Below, piece by piece: positions 45,318 through 58,268 of a stretch of DNA of 64,000 nucleotides. Made by a program: the position numbers and the translations under genes. The DNA comes from Mantamonas sphyraenae STR306. Lineage: Eukaryota; Protista; CRuMs. How positions within the stretch are numbered: position 1 is the first letter of the stretch; each line of letters begins with the position of its first letter. The stretch lies in assembly GCA_026936335.1 (NCBI GenBank), contig JAPMXV010000046.1:62001-126000 (forward strand). The letters are read 5' to 3'. The notes under the pieces are model-generated. The model was not told the origin of the DNA. It searched no databases and saw only the letters and a list, made by a program, of their open reading frames with translations.

Positions 45318-46333
45318 TCACTCCACACGTGTGCACGTCCCGTTTCCCAGGCTCGTCATGTACTTGAGCGTGGTGCGCGTCTCGTCTGCGACCAGATCCG
45401 CCGGAGACACGCTGCCGATGCACAAAGTGTGTCCACCGCCACACATGGCCTGCTTGAGCAGCTTGGTCAGTGTGCTGTCGCGGTAAGGCACGACTGTGCT
45501 GCTGGATCCGCTCGCACGCTTCTCGTGCAACACCTCAGCCATGGCCTTGAGCGCCTGCTGGCCCTCGTACACCGCCGCGTCCTGCCTGCTCGCGGGACGG
45601 AACGACGCAAGAAGCACAAGCTGCAGGCGACTGGTCACCTCTTCGTCGTTTTCCTCAAACGTGAGGTCCAGCTCAACAAGGGTGTGGCACACCGAGACGA
45701 CACCCCCGTTCTCGCCATCGCTTCCGACGCTGCAGTTCTCCAGCGCAGCCTCGATCTTCTGCATCGCATCTTCATATGACGCGACGCTGTGCGTGCTGAT
45801 GCCTTCCACGAAAGCACCCGTCTTGGGCTGGATGCGCACACGCAAGTTGGCATTCTCGGTTTCCACAAGGTCTCGCACCGAATCACCCACCTCCAACACC
45901 TTGAGTTCCACCTGCAGGTTTTCCACATTGTCCGCCTGCGCAAACACGTCCATGCACGCACGCGGCACAATGCCTCGATTCTCGCCGTAGCCCAAGGCCG
46001 CGTACGCCTTGCCCGAGCCTTGCGCTCCACAGGCAATCACGCACACGTCCTCGCCCTCCATGAGGCAGTCCACCAGCTGCTTGCCCACTTGATCGTACAC
46101 GTCCTCCTGCTCAAAGTTCTCGTACACGTGGTCGAATTCGTACTTCTCAACCAAGGGTCCGCCGCTGAACTCATCGCTCAAACTCAGTGACAGCGATTTG
46201 GGCCCCTCAACGGTCACCGCAGCCGTGCTCTTCACATCTTTCTCAAGTGTGTTGAACGGGCGCACCGTGATTACGCTTGTGCAAGGGCCCAGTGTCGAGC
46301 GCTTTTCGTGCTGCGGCTTTGCGCCGCTGCTAC

Positions 46334-46372
<39 letters not shown>

Positions 46373-49300
46373 CTGCCACACGGCTCTTGCCATCGACCAA
46401 GTACTTAAGGAAGCGCAAGGTGTCCCTGGACTCCTTGGCGACCATGTCGGCGGGCGAAACGGCTGCAATGAACAAACCGTGCCCAGAGCCGCTCAGACTG
46501 TTCTTCAACAGCATGGTGAGTGGGGTGGTGCGGTAGGTCACGACGGCATTCTTGGCCTTGTTGTGTCGCTTCTGGTGAAGAGCTTTGGCCACGTTGCCCA
46601 GGGCTGACAAGGACAGGCTGATCTCTGCGTCGATGGTGTCGGCGATCGATGCGACGGACGCCAGATCAACCATTTGCAGAACACTGCTCACCTCTTCGTT
46701 GTCCTTTTCAAACGTGATATGCAACTCGAAGATGGTGTGGGCCATGGACGCCGTGGAGTTTCGCTCAGTGGCGCGGATGCTGCGGTTTTCTGAGGCCCGT
46801 TCCATGAGCTGTTGGACCTCGTCGTACGAGTTCACCCGGTGACTGCTGAGTCCGTCCACGTAGTAGCCTGTCTTGGGTTGCAAGCGCACACGCAGCGACT
46901 TGTTGCCCGTGTCGATCAGATCTTGCACCGAATTGCGCACTTCCATGGCCTTCAACTCCACCTGCAGGTTGTCCACCTGGTCTCCCAGGCTGAACACCTC
47001 GGAACAGATGCGCGGCACAATGCCTGGCTTGTCGCCGTAGCCCACCATGGCGTACGACTTGCCAGAACCGGTTGCGCCGTACGCCAGAACCGCCACGTCC
47101 TGACCTTGCAGCAGCTGCTCCAACAGCGGACGACCCACCTGCTCGTACACTTCTTCCTGCTCGAATCCTCGTACACGTGGTCAAACTCAAACGTCTCTGG
47201 CGCGCGCTCCTCCCCCAGGTCGACCGTGATGCTCGTGGCGTTTTCCACCGTCACAGCACGTTTGCATCCGCTCGTCTTTTCCAAATGGTTGAACGGACGC
47301 ACAGTCACCATGCCCATGGTGGTGCCGGTTGCCTTCTTCTCCTTCTTGGAACGTTTGGGCTTGCTGCTGCTGCTTCCGCCGCTGCTGCTGCTGCTTCCGC
47401 CACCGCTGCCACTGCTGCCTTCGTCGTTCATGTCATTGGTCACCGACCCACCTGTCAGCAGAGAGACAAACCTGAGAGTGGAGCGCGATTCCGAGGCGAC
47501 CAAGTCCGCAGGCGAGACTGCGCCAATGAAGACGGTGTGTGTGCCCGCCGCCCAGGCCATTCTGCAGCAACCTGGTCAACGCGCTGTCTCGGTAGGGCAC
47601 GAGAATCTTCTTGTTGGGGTTCTTCCGCTGTTTGTTCAGCGAAGACGCCACGTTCGAGAGCACTGTCAAGGAGGTATTGCACTCCGTGATCAACTTGAGG
47701 ATGTGCGGATCCGAGGATGTGTGGTAGGAAGACAAGTCGACAAGCTGCAACTTGCTGGTCACAGTTTCGTCTTTGGTCTCAAAGGAGAAGTCCACCTCGA
47801 TGATGGTGTGACCCAAGGACGACGTCGAGTTCTGATCGGTCGACACAACCGTGCGGTTTGCAATCGCGCTCTGAAGCAGAGCCTCCACTTGCGTGTAAGA
47901 CTCCACCACCTTGCTTGTGAGTCCTTCCACAAAGACACCATGCTTGGGGCTGGTGCGGACCTTGAGGGCCTTCCTGGACGAGTCCAGAAGGTCGAAAACA
48001 CCGCCCATCACCTCCATGACCTTCATCTGCACGTTGAGGTTGTCCACTTTGTCGCCCAGGCCGAACATTTCGTTGCAGATGCGCGGCACAATCCCAGGCT
48101 TGTCGCCGTAACCGATAAAAGCGAACGACTTGCCCGAGCCGGCAGCGCCGTATGTGATTACGCACACATCCTCGCCTTCCAGCAAACGGTCCAAGAGTGG
48201 ACGGCCCACCTCTTCGTACACGTCGGCTTGATCAAAGTCCTCGTACACGTGGTCAAAGGTGTAGGTTTCCGAGCCGCGTCCCTCACCCCGGTCCACCGTC
48301 ACCGTGGTTGCACTGGTCACGCTCACTGCTCGCCCACTGTTGGAGGATGTCTCGAGACGGTTGAACGGGCGCACGGTGATCATGCCCATGATCGTGCCCC
48401 CCTTCGTCTTCTTGCGACGTAGGGGTTTTCCGCTTTCGCTGCCACTGCTGCTGCCACTGCTGCTGCCACTGCTGCTGTTGCCACTTGCAGACGAAGACGA
48501 GGCCTTGGACGCCTTGGAGGAGGACGACAGGCTGCTGACGTCGTCGACCTGAGAGGCTCCAAACGCCGTCAGGAATCGCAGCGTGGACAGACTCTCTTCA
48601 AACATGATGTCTGCTGGCGACACAGCTCCGATAAACAGGCGTGTGCCGTGGCCGTTGAGGGAGCGCTTGAGCAGCATGGTGAGGGGCGAGTTGCGGAATC
48701 CGACGACATTCTTTTTCGCCCTCCCCTTGCCTTTGCCCTTGCTTTGGGCGCTAGCGGCCACCACACGGCCGAGGATGTTGAGCGATCGGTTGACATCGAT
48801 GGCTGCCTTGTCAGAGGTGTCGATGATGTGCTGCTGGCCGACCAGATCCACCAGTTGGAGCGTGGCGGAGGTGGTTTCGCCGTCGCGTTTGTGGGAAACG
48901 TTAACGGACACCACAGCGTGCTTTGACAACGCCAGTGAGTTCATGGCGCTGGATCGCGTTTCTCGCTGTCGCTGTCCAACCTCCATCACTCGCCGCAGGT
49001 GGTCGTAGTCATCGACTTTCTTGGTCACCACGCCGTCCACAAAAGGCCGTTTGTCACGACCTTCGCGCACGCGCAGTTCGCCCTTCTTCTTGGTCAACAG
49101 ATCCGTAACGCCGCCCATGCACATCTCCACCATGCTGATGGTCACCTCCAGTCCTTCCAGCTCACCCTCCTGGGCAAATACCTCGGTGCAGACCCGCGGC
49201 AACAGGCCCGGATTCTCGCCGTACCCAATGGCCGCATACGATTTGCCTGAGCCTGTTGCTCCATACGTCATGATGCACACATCGTCGCCGTTGAGAAGTG

Positions 49301-49529
49301 ATTCCACGAGCGTGGTGCCCACGTCGGCGTACACGTCTTCCTGCGAAAAGTCCTGGTACACGTGGTCAAACGCAAACGCGTATGACAAACTTTCGTCGTC
49401 GGGGTTTTGCAGCGTAATGGTCGAATCATCGACACGCTGAACAATTGCGGAACATCCCATGGTGCGCTCACGATTGTTGAACGGTCTGATGGTCAGCACC
49501 GTTGTCGAAGAAGTGTGCTTCGAAGACAT
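45318..49529 (-). CDS. Protein of four tandem kinesin-3 (KIF28/KLP-6-like) pseudo-motor domains, ~1403 aa; compensating indels at ~47545 (+G) and ~47164 (-T)
   Basis: Four units (about 49500-48570, 48400-47465, 47320-46400, 46290-45360), each TxRPFNxxE..FDHVY..GxxGSGK..GYG...G[IL][VL]PR..LTxLL..VSPAD..TL[RK][FY], separated by Ser/Gly linkers. Confidence 0.85.
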
Positions 49530-49583
49530 TTTTGTTTGGGTGGAGGACAGGTCGCTGCCATTTTTTGCCCCACTTGCATGTGC

Positions 49584-51129
49584 TTACACAGGCATCTCCC
49601 GGTGACGTGTCACCTTTTTCTTGCGCCCTGCAAGCAAGGCGCTGTAGTCCAGCGTTCGAATGGACTCTCCCATGCGCTTCTTGTCGTTTGTTCCCGTCAC
49701 ACAAAACACGGTCGAGATGGCCGCCCCACTGTCGAATGACTCGCGCAGCAGACGCGTCAGCACGTGATTGCGATACGGGATACGCTTCTTGTTGTCAGCG
49801 CGCGCTCGGATGCACTCTTTCAAGGAGAGCAGCGAGGAGTTGATGTGTGCTGCCTCTTGCCTCGTCAGCGACTCCATCGTGTCCATGGACTGCACCTCGT
49901 TGCCCGCAAGGTCCACAAAGTTGAGCGTGTTGTTCATCAACAGTGCGTTCTCGTCCTCATCCATCACTGCCTGCACATTGGCACGGGCCTGGTCGACGGC
50001 GACGGACTGGGCAGCGTAGGTCTCCTCCAGTTCCTCCAGTGCTTGTTTCGTCTCGCTGTCCATTGCATCCATCATGCGATGGGCGTGCGAGTTTCCACCT
50101 CCCACGACCTGCTCGTCCACATCGGCATTTGATTCCTGCTCTTGCGCCGCTGCGCTCTCCATTGCTTTTCCAATCTCCACAATCAGCCCATCCCGGGCGT
50201 ATCCAATTTCAGTCAACGTGTCTTCAGCCTCCACGACTGCCGCCTCTGCATCCAACAGAGCTTGCGTGACAACCGCGAACCTGATCAAGCAGTGCGACCG
50301 CGAGCTCTGGTCATGCACATGATTGGCCTTGGTTTGCCTCATCTCACGACCTACGTCTATCAGAGCAGACGCCTCGTCCACTGACTTGACCAGAGTCTGT
50401 TCGAGCCCACGCACGTGCGTTCGTCGGTCGCTTGACGTCAGCACCGCCACTTCCGCCCGCCCGTTCAGCAGATCGAATGTCGATTTGCCATACACTTCCA
50501 CCATCTCCATACGCAGCTCATACTCTCCTTGCAGCTGCTCCAGCGTCTCCAACATCGCCTGTGCCCCAAGCAGTGCCAGTCCTGGCTGCTCCGGGTTTCC
50601 AAAGATTGTGTGGGTCTTGCCACTGCCTGTGTAGCCATAGCAGAAGCATGTTCCTGTGCGACCACCATGCCCATTCTGAAGCGTCAGTCACCTGGAATTC
50701 CGTTGTTGCCGTTGGCAATTGGCGCGCCAAGGGAATTCCCCGTCTCCCGCACATACCACATCCTCCCAATTGCAGTCGCTCCACCAGAGGCAGGCACACA
50801 CTCTCGAAAAGACCTTGGGTGTCCACTTCGGGCCCAAAGGCCTCGTCCATGGAGAAACAATGGGTGATGGGTTCGTTGAATTCAATCCCTCGCCTGGAGA
50901 TGCGCAGGTGATCCAACGTCATGGTGACCTTGCCCCTTCCATCCTCATCGTCATCCAAAATCCGCTCGTCAAACTGGCCCGGCTCGTCATCCAGAAGTGG
51001 GCGGATGCGGCAAAACACCTTTGCTTTCGGTGCCTCGTTCTCCGCAATGGCTATGCGCTTGCGCACAGACTGCCCGGCGACAGGCAGAACGGTGTTGCCG
51101 CTGTCATTTTCTGAGCGGGTGGTGGACAT
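49584..51129 (-). CDS. Motor-only orphan kinesin with ~100-aa helical insert; exons 51129-50757, 50653-49584
   Basis: VFCRIRP, CYGYTGSGKT (spliced), VHDQSSRSH, FVDLAGNE, INSSLLSLKECIRA, IPYRNHVLTRLL. Confidence 0.88.
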
Positions 51130-51199
51130 GGTCGATACCTTTGTGTGTTGGCTGCCGCGGCGCAGCCGCACACAACCCTGCAACCTCTCCTTGCCTCCC

Positions 51200-54100
51200 A
51201 TGAGCAAGAGCAAGGCTTTCTCCAACTCTGGAGAGTTTCTTGCAAGTAAAGACAGAATACTCACCGTGACGGCCATACGGCCGTTCAATTCGAGGGAAAC
51301 GAACCGCGACGCAAAGAAGGCGATTTCAAAGCGCGACGCCAACACAGTCGTGTGCACAAACGCAGAGGGCGAGGAGAGGGAGATCGAGCTGGACTATGTG
51401 TACGAAGACTTCACTCAAGCGGAGGTGTTTGAAGACATCGGCCAAGATATCCTGGAATCCGTACGAGAGGGAAACAACGTCCTCTTCCTCGTTTTCGGCC
51501 AAAGCGGCTCGGGCAAGAGCTACATCGTCATAGGATTCGGCGAGAACAAAGGCATTTTCCCGCGTGTGTGTGAAACCCTGTTTGGATCGACCGAACTCCA
51601 GAGTGCCGCCATTTCCATGGTGGAGGTCGGCCACATGGGCGTGCACGACCTCCTCTCCGGCGAAAAGATAGCACGCACAGACTCAAATTGGTCCAACGTG
51701 CCAGAACGTGTCGTGGAAACACACGAGCAGGTGATGGAGGCCATCGACACCGGCTCCATGAACCGTTCCGTGGCCGCTACAAACATGAACGCGACGTCCA
51801 CACGCGGTCACACCCTCATTCGGCTCCACTTTACGTTTCGTGGAGGACAACAATCAAATCTCTGCATCGTGGACATGGCTGGCAGCGAGCGCGTGGCTTT
51901 GTCTGGTGTCACGGGGATCCGGTTGAAGGAGTCGTCGTTCATCAACACGTCGTACGTCAGGCTGCGCAACGTGCTTACCGCCGTCCGTCGTCGCGGACAA
52001 GATCAAGCCAACTTCCATGTGCCCTATCGTGAATCGATCTTCACACAGCTTCTGCAGCCGTACCTGGACTGGGGGCGGGTGGCCCTCTTTGGCGCCGTGG
52101 CTCCAACCCTGGACACGTACGACGAAAGCATGATGACTCTCCGCACCCTGGACGAACTGAAAGACCCCGAGTCTGTCGCTGAGAGCAGACTGAGGAGTGC
52201 TAGGCGACTGAAGGCACAAGCCGAGGCAAACCTAAATAGCGGCAGCGCGGGCAGCACCAATGCCAATGTCGACACGCACGGCGAGCACGACGACGGATGG
52301 AAAACGCAGGACGGATTGTTGGACATGTGGAATGCCCACCTGCAGGCTCTTGGCAGTCTGCAGAACGCATCCACAGTGCCAAAAAGCGACTCGGGAAGCC
52401 GGTTGCACCTGGCATGGCTCTCCGACGAAGCGACCAGCAACATTGGTGACATTGGACGTATGGTGGCAGTCCACGTGCACTCCGGGTTGATGCGTGGACT
52501 CAATGCGTGTGTGATGACTACGGGAAACGCCTCGACCACATCAGCAGACGGAATGGCATGCATCGACGAGGAGGTTGTCCGACAGCTGGTCTTGTGCCGG
52601 CAAGGAGAATGGCAAGGACAGTTGAATGTGTTCTCGATCTGGATTCGAACAGACGACGCCGTGATCGACCTTGGCATGGATGATAGGCAAGAGGTTATGG
52701 TCACCTACACGGACGGGATGGTGATTGAAAACTGCACCATGGCCACCATTGCATGTGTACGGGAGTGGCAAACGTGGCGCACAGCGTGTGAGGCTCGTGT
52801 AGATCAACTGGGAGGCCTCCAAGGGCCGCAAACACTCAAGAACGGGATCGTGGTCCATTTGCTCAAACCACATGGTGCTCAAGGCGCAGCTGTGGCGATG
52901 GTTCACTTGGCGAACGACGCAGCATCTTCACTGAAGGAGTATCGCTGCAACCAAGACTTGGCGTTTGCGGACGTGCTCGACAGTATGAGTCACATGGCGG
53001 TGCAGCAGGTGTTGAGGCTCAAGTTGACGCAACAGCAGAGGGTGGTGTGCGACATCTTGCGAGACTGCTTGACGGGAAACGTGGCGCTGGTGCACCGCGG
53101 CGCGTTGAAAGATGGCTGGGAGGCCCTGGACTCCATCTCCGAAGGAGGTTGCAGGCCGGTGGTGCGACCGATGAATCATTGGTCAACATGGGTGCAAGCA
53201 CAAGCAGAGACGGTGGAGCGAGTGGCAACGCTCGCGGCGGCGCTGTGTTCGTCTCGACGGGACGCAGGCGTGTTGCTCGTGGATCAGGACGACGAGACAG
53301 TGCGCAGGGTGTTGAGCACAGCCGCTGAAGCCGTGTTTGCACAGGCGCTGGAAGGAGACACGCTGTGGGTGAGTGCATTTGCATGGACCGAGCAGGACCA
53401 GGTTGGAGACACAAGGCAGGCGAAGAGGTTGCACACAGGCGTTGCGTCCGAACTGCAGCAGTTTGTGGAGACAGAGTGGGAACACACCGTGCATTGGGAG
53501 TGGGCAGTGTGGTCAGAAACCACACACGAACAGCGATCGCTGCACGTGCACGTATCACAGGATGCGAGCAAGGCTGATGGCACAGAGTGGCCGCTGGCCG
53601 AGTGGTCCGTGCTGGTGAACAGTGCCGATGCAGCCAAGGCATGGCAAAGCGAGCCACAACGGGACCTGGTGCGATGTGTACGCGTGCGTCCCGTGCTGGA
53701 AAGGGAGATGGTGCACGAGGACAACAGAGACCCGTCGTCATACAGCAACGTGGACGTGGGTGGAGCGTGTGTGAGGTGGCGACCTGGCTTGCTGGCGGAA
53801 GCCGAGCACGTGTTTCACAATGCGTCCTGCGGCGATATGTGGAAGTCACTTGGACCGGGATTGGTAGAGGCGGTTTTGCACGGGGAGAGGCCAGCGATGG
53901 TGAGTGCGTTTGGGGGAGTGGGCACGGGCAAGTCGTACGCGCTGTTGGGGGTTGAGGGCAAAGAGTACGGGTTGATTGCCCGCTTTGTGCAGCAGGTGCT
54001 GGAAGAGAGCGATGGGGAGGCACGTGTCGATGTGGGTGTTCTCATGTGTCGCTACAAGGCAACCGGGGTGATGGATCTGCTGGCGGACGACGAGCCCCAG

Positions 54101-55681
54101 AAGCGCAGGTTGCGTCAGACTCGCAACGAACCCCATGCACACGTGGAGGACGAGGTGCGCGTTGCAGTCCACAGTGCAGAAGACGTCCACAAGCAATTGA
54201 ACAAGGCGATGCTCACCCTTCGACGATGGGTGACGCTCATGGGCACGCGTTCGTCCGATTTCATGTGGATGGCCGAGGTACAAGTGAACGGCATCCCTGT
54301 GCAGTTTCTGCACCTAAAGGTGATGGACCCTTCAATGACTGCGTACCGCACGCTGATGATGGATCGCATGCACCTTGCTTTCCACCTGGTAACCGGGCAT
54401 TTGGACAAGCCGTTCCTGCGCTGGCGCGAATTGCCCCTGACGCGCCTGGTACAGCGCGTGCTGGACCATCCACATTCCTATGAGGTGCAAATGGCCTGTG
54501 TTGCCCCGACCAAAACGAACGCCAAGTCGGAACTGGCACTGACAGAGGCGACGCAGTCCACACTGGAATTCCTCAATGGCTTGGTGGACGCTCGCGACCT
54601 ACCGCAGCTCAAGACCCTGCTGCGCAAACACAGCAGCGACTATGAGCTGGTCACCATGGACGAGCTGGCACAAGAAGAGCGAGACGCAAGGTGGGACTCT
54701 TCCTCCACGCTCTCCTCCTCCTCCTCATCGTCGTCGTCGTCGTCTTCACAGGCATGGATGCAGGAGTTGAACGAAGTTATGGTGGAGAACATCATGAGAG
54801 AGTACTCGGTGATGGTAGACGAGCGCTCGGAAGATGGCATGGACTGTTTGAGCGTGCAGGACGAGCAGACGCTGGTGTTCAAGGAAGACGAAAGGACGTT
54901 TCAGTTTGACCGCGTCATGGCACACAAGCACCCAAGCGAGGTGTGGAGCGGCATTCGGACAGGTATTGTGGGTCAGTTTGTCAAGGGCAGCCACGACGGC
55001 GTGGTGATGCTGTATGGGCAGACTGGAGCCGGCGACGAGGCCTTTGCAAGCCACCTCGCCAATTTCGCGAAAGACTCGCTGGCGTGCATGCAGGCGGAGA
55101 CCAAGCTGTCAGTGAGTATGTCTGTCGTGCGTGGTGGCCAGTGGATTGACTTGTTGGTGGAGGACGGAGTCATGGACAGCAACGACAGCAAGCGTGCTTT
55201 CACCCGAGTCAAGTGGGTGGAATTGGACACAATGGTCGAGCTGCAGCACTGGTACAAAACGGCATTCGGTACAAAGATGCAGGACGGAGGCGTGGCTGGT
55301 TCCTCGGACGACACCGCAGTCGTGGCCATTCGCAACTCGAACAACACCTTTTACTTTGTGCGACTGCCCGGTTCGCAGCGCCTGTACAGCAATCAGGGTG
55401 ACGAGAACGAGCTCAAGGCGCACAGGGAAGCTCAGTACGCACTGTCCAGTGTACTGAATGTGCTCGCGGAGCTCCTGAAGGAGTCCAGCCGCAGCCGCTT
55501 CATTCCGTGGCGCGATTCCATCCTGGCCAGGAACTTGCAGGCTCCTTTGACAGAAGGCCATCTGTTCTTCTTCACCCATGTGCTGTCACATGTCACCGCG
55601 TACGAGGAGTCACTTTCGTCGGTGCGTTGTTTGGACCGCCTGGCAAGTTCCGGTGGGGGGGGTTCGAAGCGACGCAGGTGA
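51200..55681 (+). CDS. Multi-head kinesin (1493 aa): one intact motor followed by 3-4 degenerate motor domains
   Basis: Head A has AIRPFNSRE, GQSGSGKS, NATSTRGH, DMAGSER, VPYRES. Later heads have VRVRP/GGVGTGKS/WRELPLTRLV and FQFDRV/LYGQTGAG/RLPGSQR/IPWRDSILAR. Confidence 0.82.
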   Translation: MSKSKAFSNSGEFLASKDRILTVTAIRPFNSRETNRDAKKAISKRDANTVVCTNAEGEEREIELDYVYEDFTQAEVFEDIGQDILESVREGNNVLFLVFGQSGSGKSYIVIGFGENKGIFPRVCETLFGSTELQSAAISMVEVGHMGVHDLLSGEKIARTDSNWSNVPERVVETHEQVMEAIDTGSMNRSVAATNMNATSTRGHTLIRLHFTFRGGQQSNLCIVDMAGSERVALSGVTGIRLKESSFINTSYVRLRNVLTAVRRRGQDQANFHVPYRESIFTQLLQPYLDWGRVALFGAVAPTLDTYDESMMTLRTLDELKDPESVAESRLRSARRLKAQAEANLNSGSAGSTNANVDTHGEHDDGWKTQDGLLDMWNAHLQALGSLQNASTVPKSDSGSRLHLAWLSDEATSNIGDIGRMVAVHVHSGLMRGLNACVMTTGNASTTSADGMACIDEEVVRQLVLCRQGEWQGQLNVFSIWIRTDDAVIDLGMDDRQEVMVTYTDGMVIENCTMATIACVREWQTWRTACEARVDQLGGLQGPQTLKNGIVVHLLKPHGAQGAAVAMVHLANDAASSLKEYRCNQDLAFADVLDSMSHMAVQQVLRLKLTQQQRVVCDILRDCLTGNVALVHRGALKDGWEALDSISEGGCRPVVRPMNHWSTWVQAQAETVERVATLAAALCSSRRDAGVLLVDQDDETVRRVLSTAAEAVFAQALEGDTLWVSAFAWTEQDQVGDTRQAKRLHTGVASELQQFVETEWEHTVHWEWAVWSETTHEQRSLHVHVSQDASKADGTEWPLAEWSVLVNSADAAKAWQSEPQRDLVRCVRVRPVLEREMVHEDNRDPSSYSNVDVGGACVRWRPGLLAEAEHVFHNASCGDMWKSLGPGLVEAVLHGERPAMVSAFGGVGTGKSYALLGVEGKEYGLIARFVQQVLEESDGEARVDVGVLMCRYKATGVMDLLADDEPQKRRLRQTRNEPHAHVEDEVRVAVHSAEDVHKQLNKAMLTLRRWVTLMGTRSSDFMWMAEVQVNGIPVQFLHLKVMDPSMTAYRTLMMDRMHLAFHLVTGHLDKPFLRWRELPLTRLVQRVLDHPHSYEVQMACVAPTKTNAKSELALTEATQSTLEFLNGLVDARDLPQLKTLLRKHSSDYELVTMDELAQEERDARWDSSSTLSSSSSSSSSSSSQAWMQELNEVMVENIMREYSVMVDERSEDGMDCLSVQDEQTLVFKEDERTFQFDRVMAHKHPSEVWSGIRTGIVGQFVKGSHDGVVMLYGQTGAGDEAFASHLANFAKDSLACMQAETKLSVSMSVVRGGQWIDLLVEDGVMDSNDSKRAFTRVKWVELDTMVELQHWYKTAFGTKMQDGGVAGSSDDTAVVAIRNSNNTFYFVRLPGSQRLYSNQGDENELKAHREAQYALSSVLNVLAELLKESSRSRFIPWRDSILARNLQAPLTEGHLFFFTHVLSHVTAYEESLSSVRCLDRLASSGGGGSKRRR

Positions 55682-55687
55682 AGAATG

Positions 55688-56560
55688 TCATTCCTTGCTC
55701 ACGATCCACTCGGGGAAAGGAGATCCGTCTTGGCGTTGCAACCAGTTGGCCTCATCCCACGTGTCCTTGCCGTTGCCATCAATAGCGTGCAACGTGAAGG
55801 CGTTGCGTGGCTTCTCCGACCGATTGTCGTAGGACTGGTGCACCAGTGCGCCATGGAGGAGGATGGCTGTTCCAGAGGGCACCTCAACTGGCACGTACTC
55901 TTCCTGGGCATAGTCCACGGGCCGGCGAGCGTTGTTGTCGTCCACATCGACGCATTCTGTGGATCCCTTGCCGTCACGGACAAAGCGTTGGGGAATTCCT
56001 GTCTTGTGCGAGCCTGGGACCACATACAAGCACCCGTTCTCCACGGTGGCGTCATCCAGCGCCACCCAAATGGCGGTCAGCGAATGAGCGGAATCCCACA
56101 GAAAAGTGGAGTCCATGTGCGGCAGCACTTCGCTCCCAATGCTCGGGTTCTTCATGATATACATGCTCTGAACCACGTGTGGGTCACTGAGACCAGCCAC
56201 GTCTGTGTAGCATCTCTTCATCGACTTTTGGTAGCAAATCGACCGGAAAACGTCGTCCAGCTCGTGCATGGCATGGCCAATCTTGTTGATGGACAGTGTC
56301 AGGTCTTGCACCAGGTTTCCCTGTTCGTCAAACGCGTCCTGCTCGTAAAACAGCCTGATCTTGTCGCCGGACTCCAGAAAGTAGGCGTCCCGAGAGTGCT
56401 CGCCGCTCTTGAACGTTCCAATGCTCTCGTGCTCGCTGTACAACTCGTTGATCAGTTCCACGGCACGTTCACGCATGCGCTGCACGTCTTCCGCAGAAAG
56501 CACGTCCGGCAACACGCAGTAGCCGTTGTTTGCAAAAAATTCTGCGTCGTCTTGGCTCAT
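55688..56560 (-). CDS. PHYHD1: Phytanoyl-CoA dioxygenase domain protein
   Basis: YFLESGDKIRLFYE, SINKIGHAMH, QSMYIMKNPSIG..PHMDSTFL, WVALDDATVENGCL, LVHQS..NRS..R. Confidence 0.88.
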   Translation of the reverse strand: MSQDDAEFFANNGYCVLPDVLSAEDVQRMRERAVELINELYSEHESIGTFKSGEHSRDAYFLESGDKIRLFYEQDAFDEQGNLVQDLTLSINKIGHAMHELDDVFRSICYQKSMKRCYTDVAGLSDPHVVQSMYIMKNPSIGSEVLPHMDSTFLWDSAHSLTAIWVALDDATVENGCLYVVPGSHKTGIPQRFVRDGKGSTECVDVDDNNARRPVDYAQEEYVPVEVPSGTAILLHGALVHQSYDNRSEKPRNAFTLHAIDGNGKDTWDEANWLQRQDGSPFPEWIVSKE

Positions 56561-56606
56561 CTTTTGGGCTTTGCTGCCCCGCGCGGCGCGTCCAAACAAA
56601 ATAGTG

Positions 56607-58268
56607 ATGACGACACGCTCCTCTCTCGCCATCTTTTTCGCTGCCTCTCTGCTTGTTTCTGCACTGGCCCACGTGGACATCCACTTTGAGCCGCTGCAGC
56701 GCATCGACGACGGTCCGGAACTGCGCGACGCCGCAGCGGACAAGATCACCAACCTGCCGTGTGAGTTGCAAAGAAACGGGCGTGAGGCTTGCTTGACACG
56801 CCGCGGGTGTGGATGGCAGCAGGCGCCGCGGTGGACACTGACACGGGTGTGCTTGTGTGTGTCAAACGCGACGACGCGCGTTCCTCCAACGGCGCATTTT
56901 TGCGTGGATGGATCGTGTCGGTGACGATGGACCACGACACGACGTACAGACGTGAAGGGCAACCTGGACTTTGACATGTACTCGGGCTATGTGACGGTGG
57001 ACGAAGCCCACGGTCGCCAACTGTTCTACTGGTTTGCAGAGAGTGCAAACCAGCCGTCGACGGATCCGCTGGTGGTGTGGCTGAACGGAGGCCCCGGCTG
57101 CTCGTCGCTGGGAGGCCTGCTGACAGAGAACGGTCCACTGTGGGCCGGATGCAACGGTGACTGCGTGGAGACCAACCCGTACAGCTGGAACCGAGTGGCC
57201 AACGTGATCTGGATCGAGTCGCCGGCTGGTGTGGGCTTCTCCTACAGCAACACGACATCGGACTACACCGTGGGCGATGCTCGCACCACGGAGGACCTCG
57301 TGACTTTTATGCAGGGATTCCTCAAGCGCTTCCCGCAGTTCAGCGAGAGCCCCCTGTGGGTGACCGGCGAGTCGTACGGCGGCCACTACGTGCCCAACTT
57401 TGCGGCGGGACTGGTGCGTGCCAACGAGGCAGGCAAGGCCAAGTTCAACTTTAAGGGCTTCATGGTGGGCAACGCATGGACAGTGGCCGAGATTGACAAC
57501 CGCGGTACTGCCAACGACTGGTACTCGCACAACCTCATCAGCAAGGCCACCATCGACGGAATCAACCAGTATTGCAACTTCTCGGACATCGGACCCCTCA
57601 AAGCCAACGAGTTTGAGGCATCGATGGTGGGCAACGCAGACTGCAGCAGCTACACGTACGAGGCCTCCCAGGAGATGGGCAACATCAACATCTACGAAAT
57701 CTACGCAGATGTGTGCCACAAGCAGGGCATGAACCAGGCAGACATGCTGCGCGCTTACCTGTCGGACATGAAGAACAGTGTGCACCGCATGCCAGAGCAG
57801 CAGCCGGCCGGGGATGCCACTCCGACGGATCCGTGCATCGGCAACTGGGCTCAGACTTACCTGAACAAGCCTGAGGTGCAGTCGGCCATCCATGCTCGCA
57901 AGTTCAGCTACCAGTGGACAGACTGCTCGCCGCGCGTGCAGTACAGCCGTTCCGACCTGCTGAGCAGCATGCTGCCCACGTACGAGTTTCTGCTGAGCAA
58001 GAACATCAAGATGCACGTGTACAGCGGCGATGTGGACGGCATTGTTGCCACTCCGGGCACTCGGGAGTGGATGGCCAAGCTCAACCCAAAGGTCACCGAC
58101 CATTGGCGCCCGTGGTCCAGCGGCGGCCAGGTGGGCGGCTACGTCCAATACTACAACAACGGCTTGTCTTTCAACACAGTGCGTGGTGCGGGACACATGG
58201 TGCCGGGTATCCAGCCCCAGCGTGCGTTTGACATGTTCTCTCGCTTCCTGGCCAACAAGCCCCTGTGA
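56607..58268 (+). CDS. Secreted serine carboxypeptidase (S10); exons 56607-56760, 56950-58268
   Basis: Signal peptide, ITNLP|Y, WLNGGPGCSS, GESYGG, YSGDVDGIV, GAGHMVP. Confidence 0.93.

What the first reader, a model, noticed from the sequence alone, without database searches (positions are those of the whole stretch)
51200..55681. Second multi-head kinesin: one apparently active motor followed by a train of degenerate heads
Seen: an uninterrupted 1493-aa ORF with no indel. Head A (~51255-52160) has GQSGSGKS, NATSTRGH (Arg kept) and DMAGSER. A very degenerate head follows (~52400-53130; GLNACVMTTG, DAVIDL, DILRDCLTG), then a possible fragment (~53230-53640), a head with P-loop GGVGTGKS but dead switches (~53665-54575), and a final head with GQTGAGDE, RLPGSQR and IPWRDS (~54830-55640). 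No stalk is visible. Head A shares RPFNxRE and GFGENKGIFPR with the four-head gene 1.7 kb away. Because this frame is intact, it independently supports multi-head kinesins being real in this genome. Inference: an older, more diverged paralogue, possibly a single-chain motor plus microtubule tether.
Basis: partly seen in the sequence, partly recalled or inferred. Interest (0 to 1): 0.85.

Follow-up and report, generated by a model that had tools for sequence, protein, structure and literature searches.

The report
Single-chain kinesin with several dead heads
An intact, transcribed 1493-residue gene in what appears to be the deep-branching flagellate Mantamonas sphyraenae strings one catalytically complete kinesin motor domain to at least two, probably three, degenerate motor-derived domains with no stalk or tail, an architecture I could not find described for any kinesin.

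Summary

- **Firm heads:** Pfam, a custom HMM and hhalign identify three kinesin motor domains. Head A (res 16-335) has all catalytic motifs. Head C (825-1126) keeps the P-loop but has dead switches. Head D (1206-1482) has lost the P-loop Lys and both switches.
- **Segment B (about 382-650):** probably a fourth, very degenerate head. hhalign and three MAFFT modes give the same colinear register, but shuffle p is only about 0.03-0.05.
- **Fragment F (651-817):** not established.
- **No stalk:** no linker exceeds about 80 residues.
- **Transcription:** contigs of a run that behaves as RNA cover 51190-55922 unspliced, broken only at the poly-Ser repeat.
- **Selection:** coding periodicity, the absence of stops and 10 of 20 synonymous allelic SNPs indicate the whole frame is under selection.
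- **Relatives:** heads A, C and D group with the four heads of the neighbouring gene inside a kinesin-3-like set. No orthologue of the architecture appeared in 1.8 to 5.8 billion proteins.
- **Organism:** assembly statistics match Mantamonas sphyraenae.

A microtubule-tether role for the pseudo-heads is inference. Verdict: a real new architectural variant of kinesin, with function untested.

The parts
51190..55922 (+). Stretch covered by two contigs of run X1, which behaves as RNA: 51190-54743 and 54712-55922. No joints. The break falls only in the poly-Ser repeat.
   Evidence: table 8. X1 alone carries a GT..AG-type joined form in the neighbouring gene, and removing that intron restores the neighbour's frame.
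51200..55681 (+). Coding sequence, 1493 codons plus TGA stop. The first ATG lies 10 nt inside the RNA contig.
   Evidence: GC3 periodicity is 0.67-0.74 in every segment.
51245..52204 (+). Head A (res 16-335): complete kinesin motor domain with P-loop GQSGSGKS, switch I NATSTRGH and switch II DMAGSER. It has a shortened L8/beta5 region and no recognisable neck linker.
   Evidence: Pfam 186.5 bits; custom HMM 308 bits; alignment.
52205..52342 (+). A-B linker (res 336-381): one short helix, then a Gly/Ser/Asn-rich stretch.
52343..53149 (+). Segment B (res 382-650): probable fourth, highly degenerate motor-derived domain. No P-loop (GNASTTSA), no switch I, and switch II reads HLANDA.
   Evidence: hhalign P 0.048, colinear over 283 columns. 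Same register in three MAFFT modes. Shuffles 3/120 and 5/100. AF2 with a kinesin alignment gives pLDDT 70.5, and the top fold match is KIF1A at TM 0.63 (not independent). No Pfam hit.
53150..53650 (+). Segment F (res 651-817): Trp-rich (6.4%) alpha/beta segment that opens with CRPVVRPMNHW. Possibly the N-terminal half of a head; not established.
   Evidence: hhalign shuffles 28/120 with the broad profile and 0/100 with the local profile. The register is inconsistent between methods. Nearest language-model clusters are kinesins at 0.80-0.83, which is a lead only.
53672..54577 (+). Head C (res 825-1126): full-length degenerate motor domain. The Walker-A P-loop GGVGTGKS is kept, switch I and II are lost, and RWRELPLTRL stands at L12/alpha5.
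   Evidence: Pfam 55 bits; HMM 58 + 6 bits; hhalign probability 99.0 over 305 columns.
54578..54814 (+). C-D linker (res 1127-1205), including a run of 12 Ser (54713-54748), where all short-read contigs break.
54815..55645 (+). Head D (res 1206-1482): full-length degenerate motor domain. The P-loop reads GQTGAGDE (Lys and Thr lost), switch II reads RLPGSQ, and alpha4-L12-alpha5 is well kept (IPWRDSILARNL).
   Evidence: Pfam 47.4 bits; HMM 27 + 32 bits; hhalign probability 98.7 over 291 columns; alignment.
55646..55678 (+). Eleven-residue C-terminal tail SSGGGGSKRRR. There is no cargo-binding domain.

Best explanation
SHOWN. Window 51200-55681 is one intact gene, covered unspliced by contigs of a run that behaves as RNA. 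It encodes a stalk-less, tail-less kinesin of 1493 residues. The N-terminal motor domain (head A) keeps every nucleotide-hydrolysis motif. At least two further full-length motor-derived domains follow in the same chain. Head C keeps the P-loop but has no functional switches. Head D has lost the P-loop Lys and both switches. Segment B is probably a third, more eroded pseudo-head, and a Trp-rich segment of uncertain origin (F) sits between B and C. Heads A, C and D are paralogues of the four heads of the gene about 1.6 kb away, and the whole group falls with kinesin-3-type motors. The frame shows signs of purifying selection along its whole length.

INFERRED. Head A is the only ATPase. The pseudo-heads have lost catalysis but keep the L12/alpha5 microtubule-contact motif: PYRES in A, RWREL in C, PWRDS in D, and a lone Arg in B. 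They therefore most likely act as nucleotide-independent microtubule-binding modules. Head C may instead be locked with nucleotide bound. Joined to head A by flexible Ser/Gly-rich linkers, they would hold the active head on the lattice, or bridge neighbouring tubulin dimers, protofilaments or microtubules. This is the role the non-catalytic Vik1/Cik1 head plays for Kar3, but here in cis and several times over. With no coiled coil and no cargo domain, the likely target is the microtubule array itself (bracing, bundling, sliding or dynamics) rather than vesicle transport.
For: - **Frame and motifs:**
- **Three firm heads:** Pfam, custom HMM, hhalign probability 99.0 and 98.7 over about 300 columns.
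- **Motif states:** alignment.
- **Segment B:** same colinear register from hhalign and three MAFFT modes. Shuffles reach the observed score 3/120 and 5/100 times. The nearest named language-model clusters are kinesins. The alignment-guided AF2 model has pLDDT 70.5 and matches KIF1A at TM 0.63.
- **Transcription:** X1 contigs cover 51190-54743 and 54712-55922 without joints. X1 alone carries the 103-nt GT..AG skip in the neighbouring gene, and that skip restores the neighbour's frame.
- **Independent assemblies:** Illumina-type contigs of X2 and X3 are colinear with the window.
- **Selection:** GC3 is 0.67-0.74 in every segment. P(no stop) is about 3.5e-10. Of 20 allelic SNPs, 10 are synonymous against 23% expected (p = 0.008). 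In B to D, 8 of 14 are synonymous (p = 0.006). No variant introduces a stop or frameshift.
- **Paralogy:**
- **Functional precedent:** Kar3-Cik1/Vik1 (PMC4338441, PMC3384419).
Against: - No binding, ATPase or localisation data exist.
- No RNA contig bridges the poly-Ser repeat. The 3' contig has a higher mean depth (95 against 22), so a separate or additional transcript for head D cannot be excluded.
- Head A lacks a recognisable neck linker and has a shortened L8, so motility is uncertain.
- The kinesin ancestry of B is statistically marginal, and that of F is unproven.
- No orthologue is available to show conservation of the pseudo-heads.
- The SNP sample is small.
Confidence: 0.55

Rival explanations
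1. The downstream pseudo-heads no longer touch microtubules. They have been re-used as a scaffold, a protein-interaction platform or an intramolecular regulator (for example autoinhibition) of head A.
For: - Catalytic motifs are gone and branches are very long: 6.3 and 4.8 changes per column for C and D.
- The alpha4 helix of C is poorly conserved.
- F is Trp-rich and unlike any known family.
- Selection on the frame is equally compatible with a new non-microtubule function.
Against: Among the hallmark motifs compared by eye, L12/alpha5 is the one the degenerate heads keep best. This is the motif that contacts tubulin in canonical kinesins (established kinesin structural knowledge). There is also no added domain that would suggest another partner.
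Confidence: 0.25
2. Only head A matters. The rest is a decaying remnant of an ancestral multi-head gene that is still transcribed and translated but has no function.
For: Extreme divergence of B, F, C and D. No homologue anywhere for the B-F-C piece. The neighbouring four-head gene shows a frameshifted stretch.
Against: - A neutral remnant this diverged should have acquired stops or frameshifts. About 22 stops are expected and none is seen.
- Codon-position GC periodicity is as strong as in head A and in unrelated genes.
- Synonymous variants are enriched in B to D: 8 of 14 against 23% expected, p = 0.006.
- Both alleles sampled keep the frame.
Confidence: 0.08
3. It is not one polypeptide. 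Either an assembly misjoin at the poly-Ser repeat or internal transcription starts mean that head D (or other parts) are separate products.
For: No short-read contig, DNA or RNA, bridges 54712-54748 with 31 or more letters on both sides. The X1 contig downstream of the repeat has a roughly four-fold higher mean depth.
Against: - The frame runs straight through the repeat with no stop.
- The window comes from a long-read assembly (FALCON/PacBio if the organism assignment is right), for which a 36-nt repeat is trivial.
- One RNA contig already joins A, B, F and C.
- The neighbouring gene has the same Ser-rich linkers between its heads.
- Higher depth at the 3' end is usual in poly-A libraries, and a convergent gene overlaps there.
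Confidence: 0.07

Closest known systems
Kar3-Vik1 / Kar3-Cik1 (budding-yeast kinesin-14 heterodimers with a non-catalytic motor homology domain; PMC4338441, PMC3384419)
   Same: One catalytic kinesin head works with a kinesin-fold head that cannot hydrolyse ATP but binds microtubules. The non-catalytic head gives tethering and processivity.
   Different: Kar3 and Vik1/Cik1 are two polypeptides joined by a coiled coil, with C-terminal motors of the kinesin-14 family and a single pseudo-head. Here everything is in one chain, N-terminal and kinesin-3-like, with two to four pseudo-heads and no coiled coil. Microtubule binding by the pseudo-heads is untested.
Kinesin-3 motors (KIF1A, KIF16B, KIF28, fungal Klp8)
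   Same: They are the best sequence matches of head A (39-40% identity). In a limited sample, the clade of A plus the neighbour's heads falls in one starred set with them (99/96).
   Different: There is no FHA domain, no neck coil, and no PH/PX or other tail. The neck-linker motif is not recognisable, and L8 is shortened.
The four-head kinesin gene in the same window (45321-49583, minus strand)
   Same: Tandem motor domains in one frame, Ser-rich linkers, no stalk, and shared RPFNxRE and GxGExxGxxPR motifs. Its heads form a clade with head A.
   Different: All four of its heads keep the P-loop but lack the switch I Arg and switch II Glu. They are 37-52% identical to each other. Its frame is disturbed between about 47510 and 47180. 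The gene studied here has one fully competent head, much more eroded followers and an intact frame.
Predicted two-motor kinesins in public proteomes: Achlya hypogyna OQR84285.1 (P0040), Paulinella micropora EP00808_P011517 (P0041), P0122, P0159
   Same: More than one Pfam Kinesin domain in one predicted polypeptide.
   Different: They have only two heads. Both score strongly against the Pfam motor model and show canonical P-loop, switch I and switch II motifs where I read the sequences. They also carry coiled coils or tail domains (MyTH4, RA, PDZ, EF-hand, hydrolase). They are gene predictions without published characterisation that I could find, and none is an orthologue of this gene.
Dynein heavy chain (analogy only, from general knowledge)
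   Same: One chain carries several copies of an ATPase module, of which only some remain catalytic while the degenerate ones serve structural or regulatory roles.
   Different: An unrelated fold (AAA+ ring) with fixed ring geometry and no homology.

Membership tests
Kinesin superfamily (Pfam PF00225 motor domain) | Motor-domain profile match above the curated cut-off | tested here: met
   A scores 186.5, C 55 and D 47.4 bits against a cut-off of 29.3. B and F have no Pfam match.
Kinesin superfamily (Pfam PF00225 motor domain) | Catalytic motif set: P-loop GxxxxGK[ST], switch I SSRSH-type with Arg, switch II DxxGxE | tested here: met
   Met for head A only (GQSGSGKS, STRGH, DMAGSE). C keeps only the P-loop. 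D and B keep none.
Kinesin superfamily (Pfam PF00225 motor domain) | Microtubule-stimulated ATPase and microtubule binding | not testable with these tools
   Needs protein biochemistry.
Kinesin-3 family | Phylogenetic placement of the motor domain with KIF1A, KIF16B and KIF28 | tested here: inconclusive
   A starred set of 13 rows (99/96) holds A, N1-N4 and the kinesin-3 references. However, only 14 outside references were sampled and A has a long branch of 1.83.
Kinesin-3 family | FHA domain and neck coil after the motor | tested here: not met
   No FHA or other domain in Pfam. Only a helix of about 20 residues follows head A.
Kinesin-3 family | Lys-rich K-loop in L12 | tested here: inconclusive
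   Head A has RRRGQDQ at that place, against the KNKKKKK run of the aligned fish KIF1A (L12 position also).
Kar3-Vik1/Cik1-type catalytic plus non-catalytic head pair | Coiled-coil heterodimer of two polypeptides with C-terminal heads | tested here: not met
   Single chain, N-terminal active head, no stalk. The resemblance is functional only.
Kar3-Vik1/Cik1-type catalytic plus non-catalytic head pair | The non-catalytic head has the kinesin fold, lacks a nucleotide site and binds microtubules | tested here: inconclusive
   Fold homology is shown for C and D. The nucleotide site is lost in D and partly kept in C. Microtubule binding was not tested.

The most novel reading that the evidence does not exclude
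The protein is a new class of microtubule-lattice device: a flexible chain of kinesin-fold tubulin-binding modules. The pseudo-heads dock on successive tubulin dimers or adjacent protofilaments as a staple or ruler, comparable in logic to tandem TOG arrays. The single live head at the N-terminus supplies ATP-driven loading, release or sliding. Together with the neighbouring four-head gene, it would define a lineage-specific family of single-chain multi-head kinesins. These would build or brace the gliding flagellate's microtubular cytoskeleton, and would show that kinesin processivity or anchoring can evolve without dimerisation.
Probability: 0.15. Interest if true: 0.85.

Novelty: new variant of a known kind. 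Interest (0 to 1): 0.66.

Why it matters
Every characterised kinesin I know of carries one motor domain per chain and gains a second head by coiled-coil dimerisation. Seven full-text searches found no description of a natural kinesin with several motor domains in one chain. Some of those searches addressed other questions, and subscription journals are not covered.

This gene is an intact, apparently transcribed and selected example in which an active head is joined in cis to several pseudo-heads, without a stalk or cargo domain. If the pseudo-heads bind microtubules, it is a natural single-chain 'heteromeric' motor. Biophysicists have had to build that kind of construct artificially to study head-head coordination and tethering.

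It also comes from CRuMs, an under-studied branch near the base of Amorphea. That makes it relevant to how motor repertoires diversify, and to pseudo-enzyme evolution in general.

Tried and rejected
1. **Alternative genetic code (TGA as sense).** I considered this because the neighbouring gene's ORFs are separated by single in-frame TGAs and the genome search reported TGA-only internal stops. I rejected it. The stretch between the TGAs reads as a frameshifted poly-Ser and head start (QQWQRWRKQQQQ...), and TGA dominance follows from TpA depletion: TGA occurs 911 times, TAG 189 and TAA 108.
2. **Kinetoplastid origin.** I guessed this from the GC content and long ORFs, then rejected it. Genes alternate strands, introns exist, and the assembly statistics match another organism.
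3. **AlphaFold2 without an alignment on res 336-824.** pLDDT was 39.7 and Foldseek found nothing at E <= 0.001. Uninformative.
4. **Sequence search of res 336-824 against PDB chains.** No hit at E <= 10.
5. **Orthologue searches.**
   - Whole protein against 5.8 billion proteins.
   - Residues 1-1200 against 1.84 billion representatives.
   - The B-F-C piece alone.
   - Exact-product look-up.
   - Result: no protein shares the architecture. The 7-stretch hit P0038 and the 3-stretch hit P0039 are near-identical repeat copies, most likely assembly or gene-model artefacts.
6. **Paralogues of B, F, C or D elsewhere in the genome.** All 33 other matches in the genome lie within residues 19-359 of the query, that is, head A.
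7. **Literature searches for tandem or multiple kinesin motor domains**. These returned only dimer-related papers and Kar3-Vik1/Cik1.
8. **X4.** Low-depth short contigs, no use for structure.
9. **Complex prediction with tubulin.** Not attempted. An alpha/beta-tubulin dimer plus a head exceeds the size limit.

Full report
**What is at the coordinates.**
- The mechanical ORF runs 50921..55681 on the + strand.
- On the whole protein, Pfam finds four matched stretches of the Kinesin motor domain.
- Scanned in pieces, head A scores 186.5 bits, head C 55 bits and head D 47.4 bits against a curated cut-off of 29.3. The pieces covering res 341-670 and 671-820 match nothing.
- A profile built from 43 motor domains (public hits plus the heads of this locus) places the domains at res 16-335 (A), 825-1020 plus 1073-1126 (C), and 1206-1278 plus 1379-1482 (D).
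- hhalign aligns C and D to the motor profile over 305 and 291 columns, with probabilities 99.0 and 98.7. Both are therefore full-length motor-derived domains, not fragments.

**State of the heads (alignments).**

| Head | P-loop | Switch I | Switch II | L12/alpha5 | Other |
|---|---|---|---|---|---|
| A | GQSGSGKS | NATSTRGH, Arg kept | DMAGSE | PYRESIFTQLL | Shortened L8/beta5; nothing resembling the kinesin-3 neck linker after alpha6 |
| C | GGVGTGKS, intact Walker A | none recognisable | none recognisable | RWRELPLTRLV | |
| D | GQTGAGDE, Lys and Thr lost | none recognisable | RLPGSQ | PWRDSILARNL | alpha4 region alignable |

- Among the hallmark motifs compared by eye, L12/alpha5 is the one the dead heads keep best. 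It includes the Arg that contacts tubulin in canonical kinesins (general structural knowledge).
- This retention is the only sequence-level argument for microtubule binding by the pseudo-heads. It is an inference.

**Segment B (res about 382-650).**
- HMMER does not see it.
- hhalign gives a colinear alignment over 283 columns at P = 0.048.
- Three MAFFT modes independently give the same register:

| Segment B | Canonical kinesin element |
|---|---|
| GLNACVMTTG | GYNxxxFAYGQTG |
| DAVIDL | VRDLL |
| IVVHLLKPH...AVAMVHLANDA | beta6-beta7 and DLAGSE |
| SLKE..CNQDL | RLKEG.NINKSL |
| QQRVVCDILRDCLTGN | PYRDSxLTxLLxxxLGGN |

- Against shuffled versions of B, the observed score is reached 3 times in 120 with the broad profile and 5 times in 100 with a profile of the local heads only. 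The evidence is marginal.
- Language-model features place B nearest to unnamed clusters. The nearest clusters with a Pfam family are kinesins at 0.86-0.88, which the tool rates as a lead only.
- AlphaFold2 without an alignment failed: pLDDT 39.7, and Foldseek found nothing.
- With a 60-row alignment of kinesin motors, B is modelled at pLDDT 70.5 and pTM 0.69. The order of helices and strands looks to me like that of a kinesin motor domain, and the best PDB matches are KIF1A motor domains at TM 0.63. The alignment itself carries the kinesin fold, so this shows compatibility and is not independent proof.
- I rate B as a degenerate head at about 0.75.

**Segment F (res 651-817).**
- It opens with CRPVVRPMNHW, reminiscent of the RVRPxNxxE start of a head, and it is 6.4% Trp.
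- The shuffle test is negative with the broad profile (28/120) and positive with the local profile (0/100).
- MAFFT and hhalign put its helices in different registers.
- Its nearest named language-model clusters are kinesins, but at only 0.80-0.83.
- Its origin is therefore open.

**No stalk, no tail.** The parts outside head-like segments are res 1-15, 336-381, 1127-1205 (including 12 consecutive Ser) and the 11-residue end SSGGGGSKRRR. Pfam finds no other domain. B, F and C abut one another directly.

**Is it one real gene?**
- Independent short-read contigs of two DNA-like runs (X2, X3; even depth) are colinear with the window over 50500-56380. They break only at the poly-Ser repeat.
- Run X1 is labelled 'DNA?' as a guess but behaves as RNA, for three reasons:
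  - Its contig depths differ several-fold between genes.
  - It leaves the 74-nt intergenic gap 51116-51189 uncovered.
  - It alone carries a 103-nt skip (50653-50755) whose ends read GT..AG on the minus strand. Removing the skip fuses two frames of the neighbouring minus-strand gene into a 480-residue kinesin starting at ATG 51129.
- In X1, one 3554-nt contig runs from 51190, ten bases before the ATG, to 54743 without any joint. It joins A, B, F and C.
- A second X1 contig runs from 54712 to 55922, which is 241 nt past the stop.
- Caveats: contigs cannot prove transcript ends. No RNA contig bridges the Ser repeat. The 3' contig has a higher mean depth.

**Selection.**
- Each segment has codon-position GC periodicity (GC2 0.40-0.50, GC3 0.67-0.74) like head A and like unrelated genes in the window.
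- At the window's stop-triplet density, about 22 stops are expected in the 1153 codons after head A, and none occurs (P about 3.5e-10).
- The three runs differ from the assembly at 20 single bases inside the ORF. I take these to be allelic.
  - Ten are synonymous against 23% expected (binomial p = 0.008).
  - In B to D, 8 of 14 are synonymous (p = 0.006).
  - None creates a stop.
  - The one indel is an in-frame 6-nt difference.
- The sample is small, but it argues against a neutral relic.

**Relatives.**
- Within the genome, only head A finds paralogues. B, F, C and D are unique.
- Head A is 26-35% identical to the four heads (N1-N4) of the minus-strand gene at 45321-49583.
- A maximum-likelihood tree puts {A, C, D, N1-N4} on one side of a branch with 98% SH-aLRT. 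C and D have very long branches, so their exact place is unsure.
- Without C and D:
  - {A, N1-N4} has support 99/97.
  - N1-N4 are monophyletic at 100/96.
  - The group sits with KIF1A, KIF16B, KIF28 and Klp8 in a set supported 99/96.
- The neighbour's heads thus duplicated, or were homogenised, after separating from A. 'More diverged' is right; 'older' cannot be decided.
- All four neighbour heads keep the P-loop but lack the switch I Arg and switch II Glu. Head A is therefore the only fully equipped head among the eight or nine in the two genes.
- The neighbour's frame is disturbed by a frameshifted stretch at about 47510-47180. This explains why its ORFs are split. It is not a sign of a variant genetic code.

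**Outside the genome.**
- No protein shares the architecture:
  - among 5.8 billion proteins by word-seeded search;
  - among 1.84 billion representatives by exhaustive HMMER with res 1-1200, where the best real hits match head A only;
  - and the B-F-C piece alone finds nothing.
- Predicted two-motor kinesins do exist, for example in Achlya hypogyna (OQR84285.1), Paulinella micropora (EukProt) and two unnamed sources.
- Those have two heads that score strongly against the motor model, plus coiled coils or tail domains. I found no paper describing them, or any natural kinesin with several motor domains in one chain.
- The closest functional precedent is the non-catalytic motor homology domain of Vik1/Cik1, which tethers Kar3 to the microtubule (PMC4338441, PMC3384419).

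**Organism.** The window's genome has 25,061,354 bases in 78 contigs, and the window's GC content is about 59%. The FALCON assembly of Mantamonas sphyraenae is reported as 25.06 Mb, 78 primary contigs and 59.19% GC (PMC10492846). The match of statistics is exact, but it remains an inference. That paper does not mention kinesins.

**Mechanism and verdict.**
- Shown: an intact, apparently transcribed and selected single-chain kinesin with one catalytically complete head and at least two, probably three, dead heads, without a stalk or tail.
- Inferred: the dead heads act as nucleotide-independent microtubule anchors or cross-bridges for the one live head. The target is the microtubule array rather than cargo.
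- Rivals: re-use of the pseudo-heads for non-microtubule interactions, a functionless relic, or separate products.
- I class it as a new architectural variant of a known superfamily. It would interest motor specialists, but its function is untested.

Noticed in passing
window 47180-47510 (minus strand), inside the four-head gene 45321-49583: The three ORFs of the neighbouring gene share one frame, split by in-frame TGA codons. The stretch between them reads as a frameshifted poly-Ser linker plus head start (QQWQRWRKQQQQ...). This implies two compensating indels: either residual long-read errors in an AGC repeat or a real lesion.
   Followed up: partly
window 49587-51129 (minus strand); intron 50653-50755: A separate kinesin gene lies between the two multi-head genes. 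An RNA-like contig skips 103 nt with GT..AG-type ends, and removing them yields a 480-residue kinesin from ATG 51129. Its start codon lies only about 70 nt from the ATG at 51200 on the other strand, so the two genes probably share a bidirectional promoter.
   Followed up: partly
window 55486: All three well-covered runs lack 6 nt relative to the assembly, one copy of a tandem AGCCGC (Ser-Arg) just before IPWRDS in head D. This is either an in-frame allele or an assembly error.
   Followed up: no
window 55681-55922 and 55688-56977 (minus strand): A phytanoyl-CoA dioxygenase (PhyH) gene converges on the kinesin gene with only 6 nt between the two stop codons. The RNA-like contig of the kinesin runs 241 nt into it, so the 3' UTRs must overlap.
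   Followed up: no
window 45324-49505 (minus strand), heads N1-N4: All four heads of the neighbouring gene keep GxxGSGK[SA] but lack the switch I Arg and switch II Gly/Glu. Head A of the gene studied here is therefore the only fully equipped head in the two genes.
   Followed up: yes
window 53150-53650: Segment F is unusually rich in tryptophan (6.4%, for example HTVHWEWAVWSE). It has no match in Pfam or among PDB sequences.
   Followed up: partly
PDB 9e5c chain 4y (fold search of the segment B model): The kinesin-fold matches include a 661-residue chain of the Trypanosoma brucei flagellar doublet 96-nm repeat. This suggests kinesin-fold proteins can sit as fixed parts of axonemal microtubules, a possible lead for the role of dead heads.
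   Followed up: no
P0038 and P0039: These public predicted proteins have 3-7 near-identical partial kinesin motor repeats. They look like assembly or gene-model artefacts rather than true multi-head kinesins.
   Followed up: no
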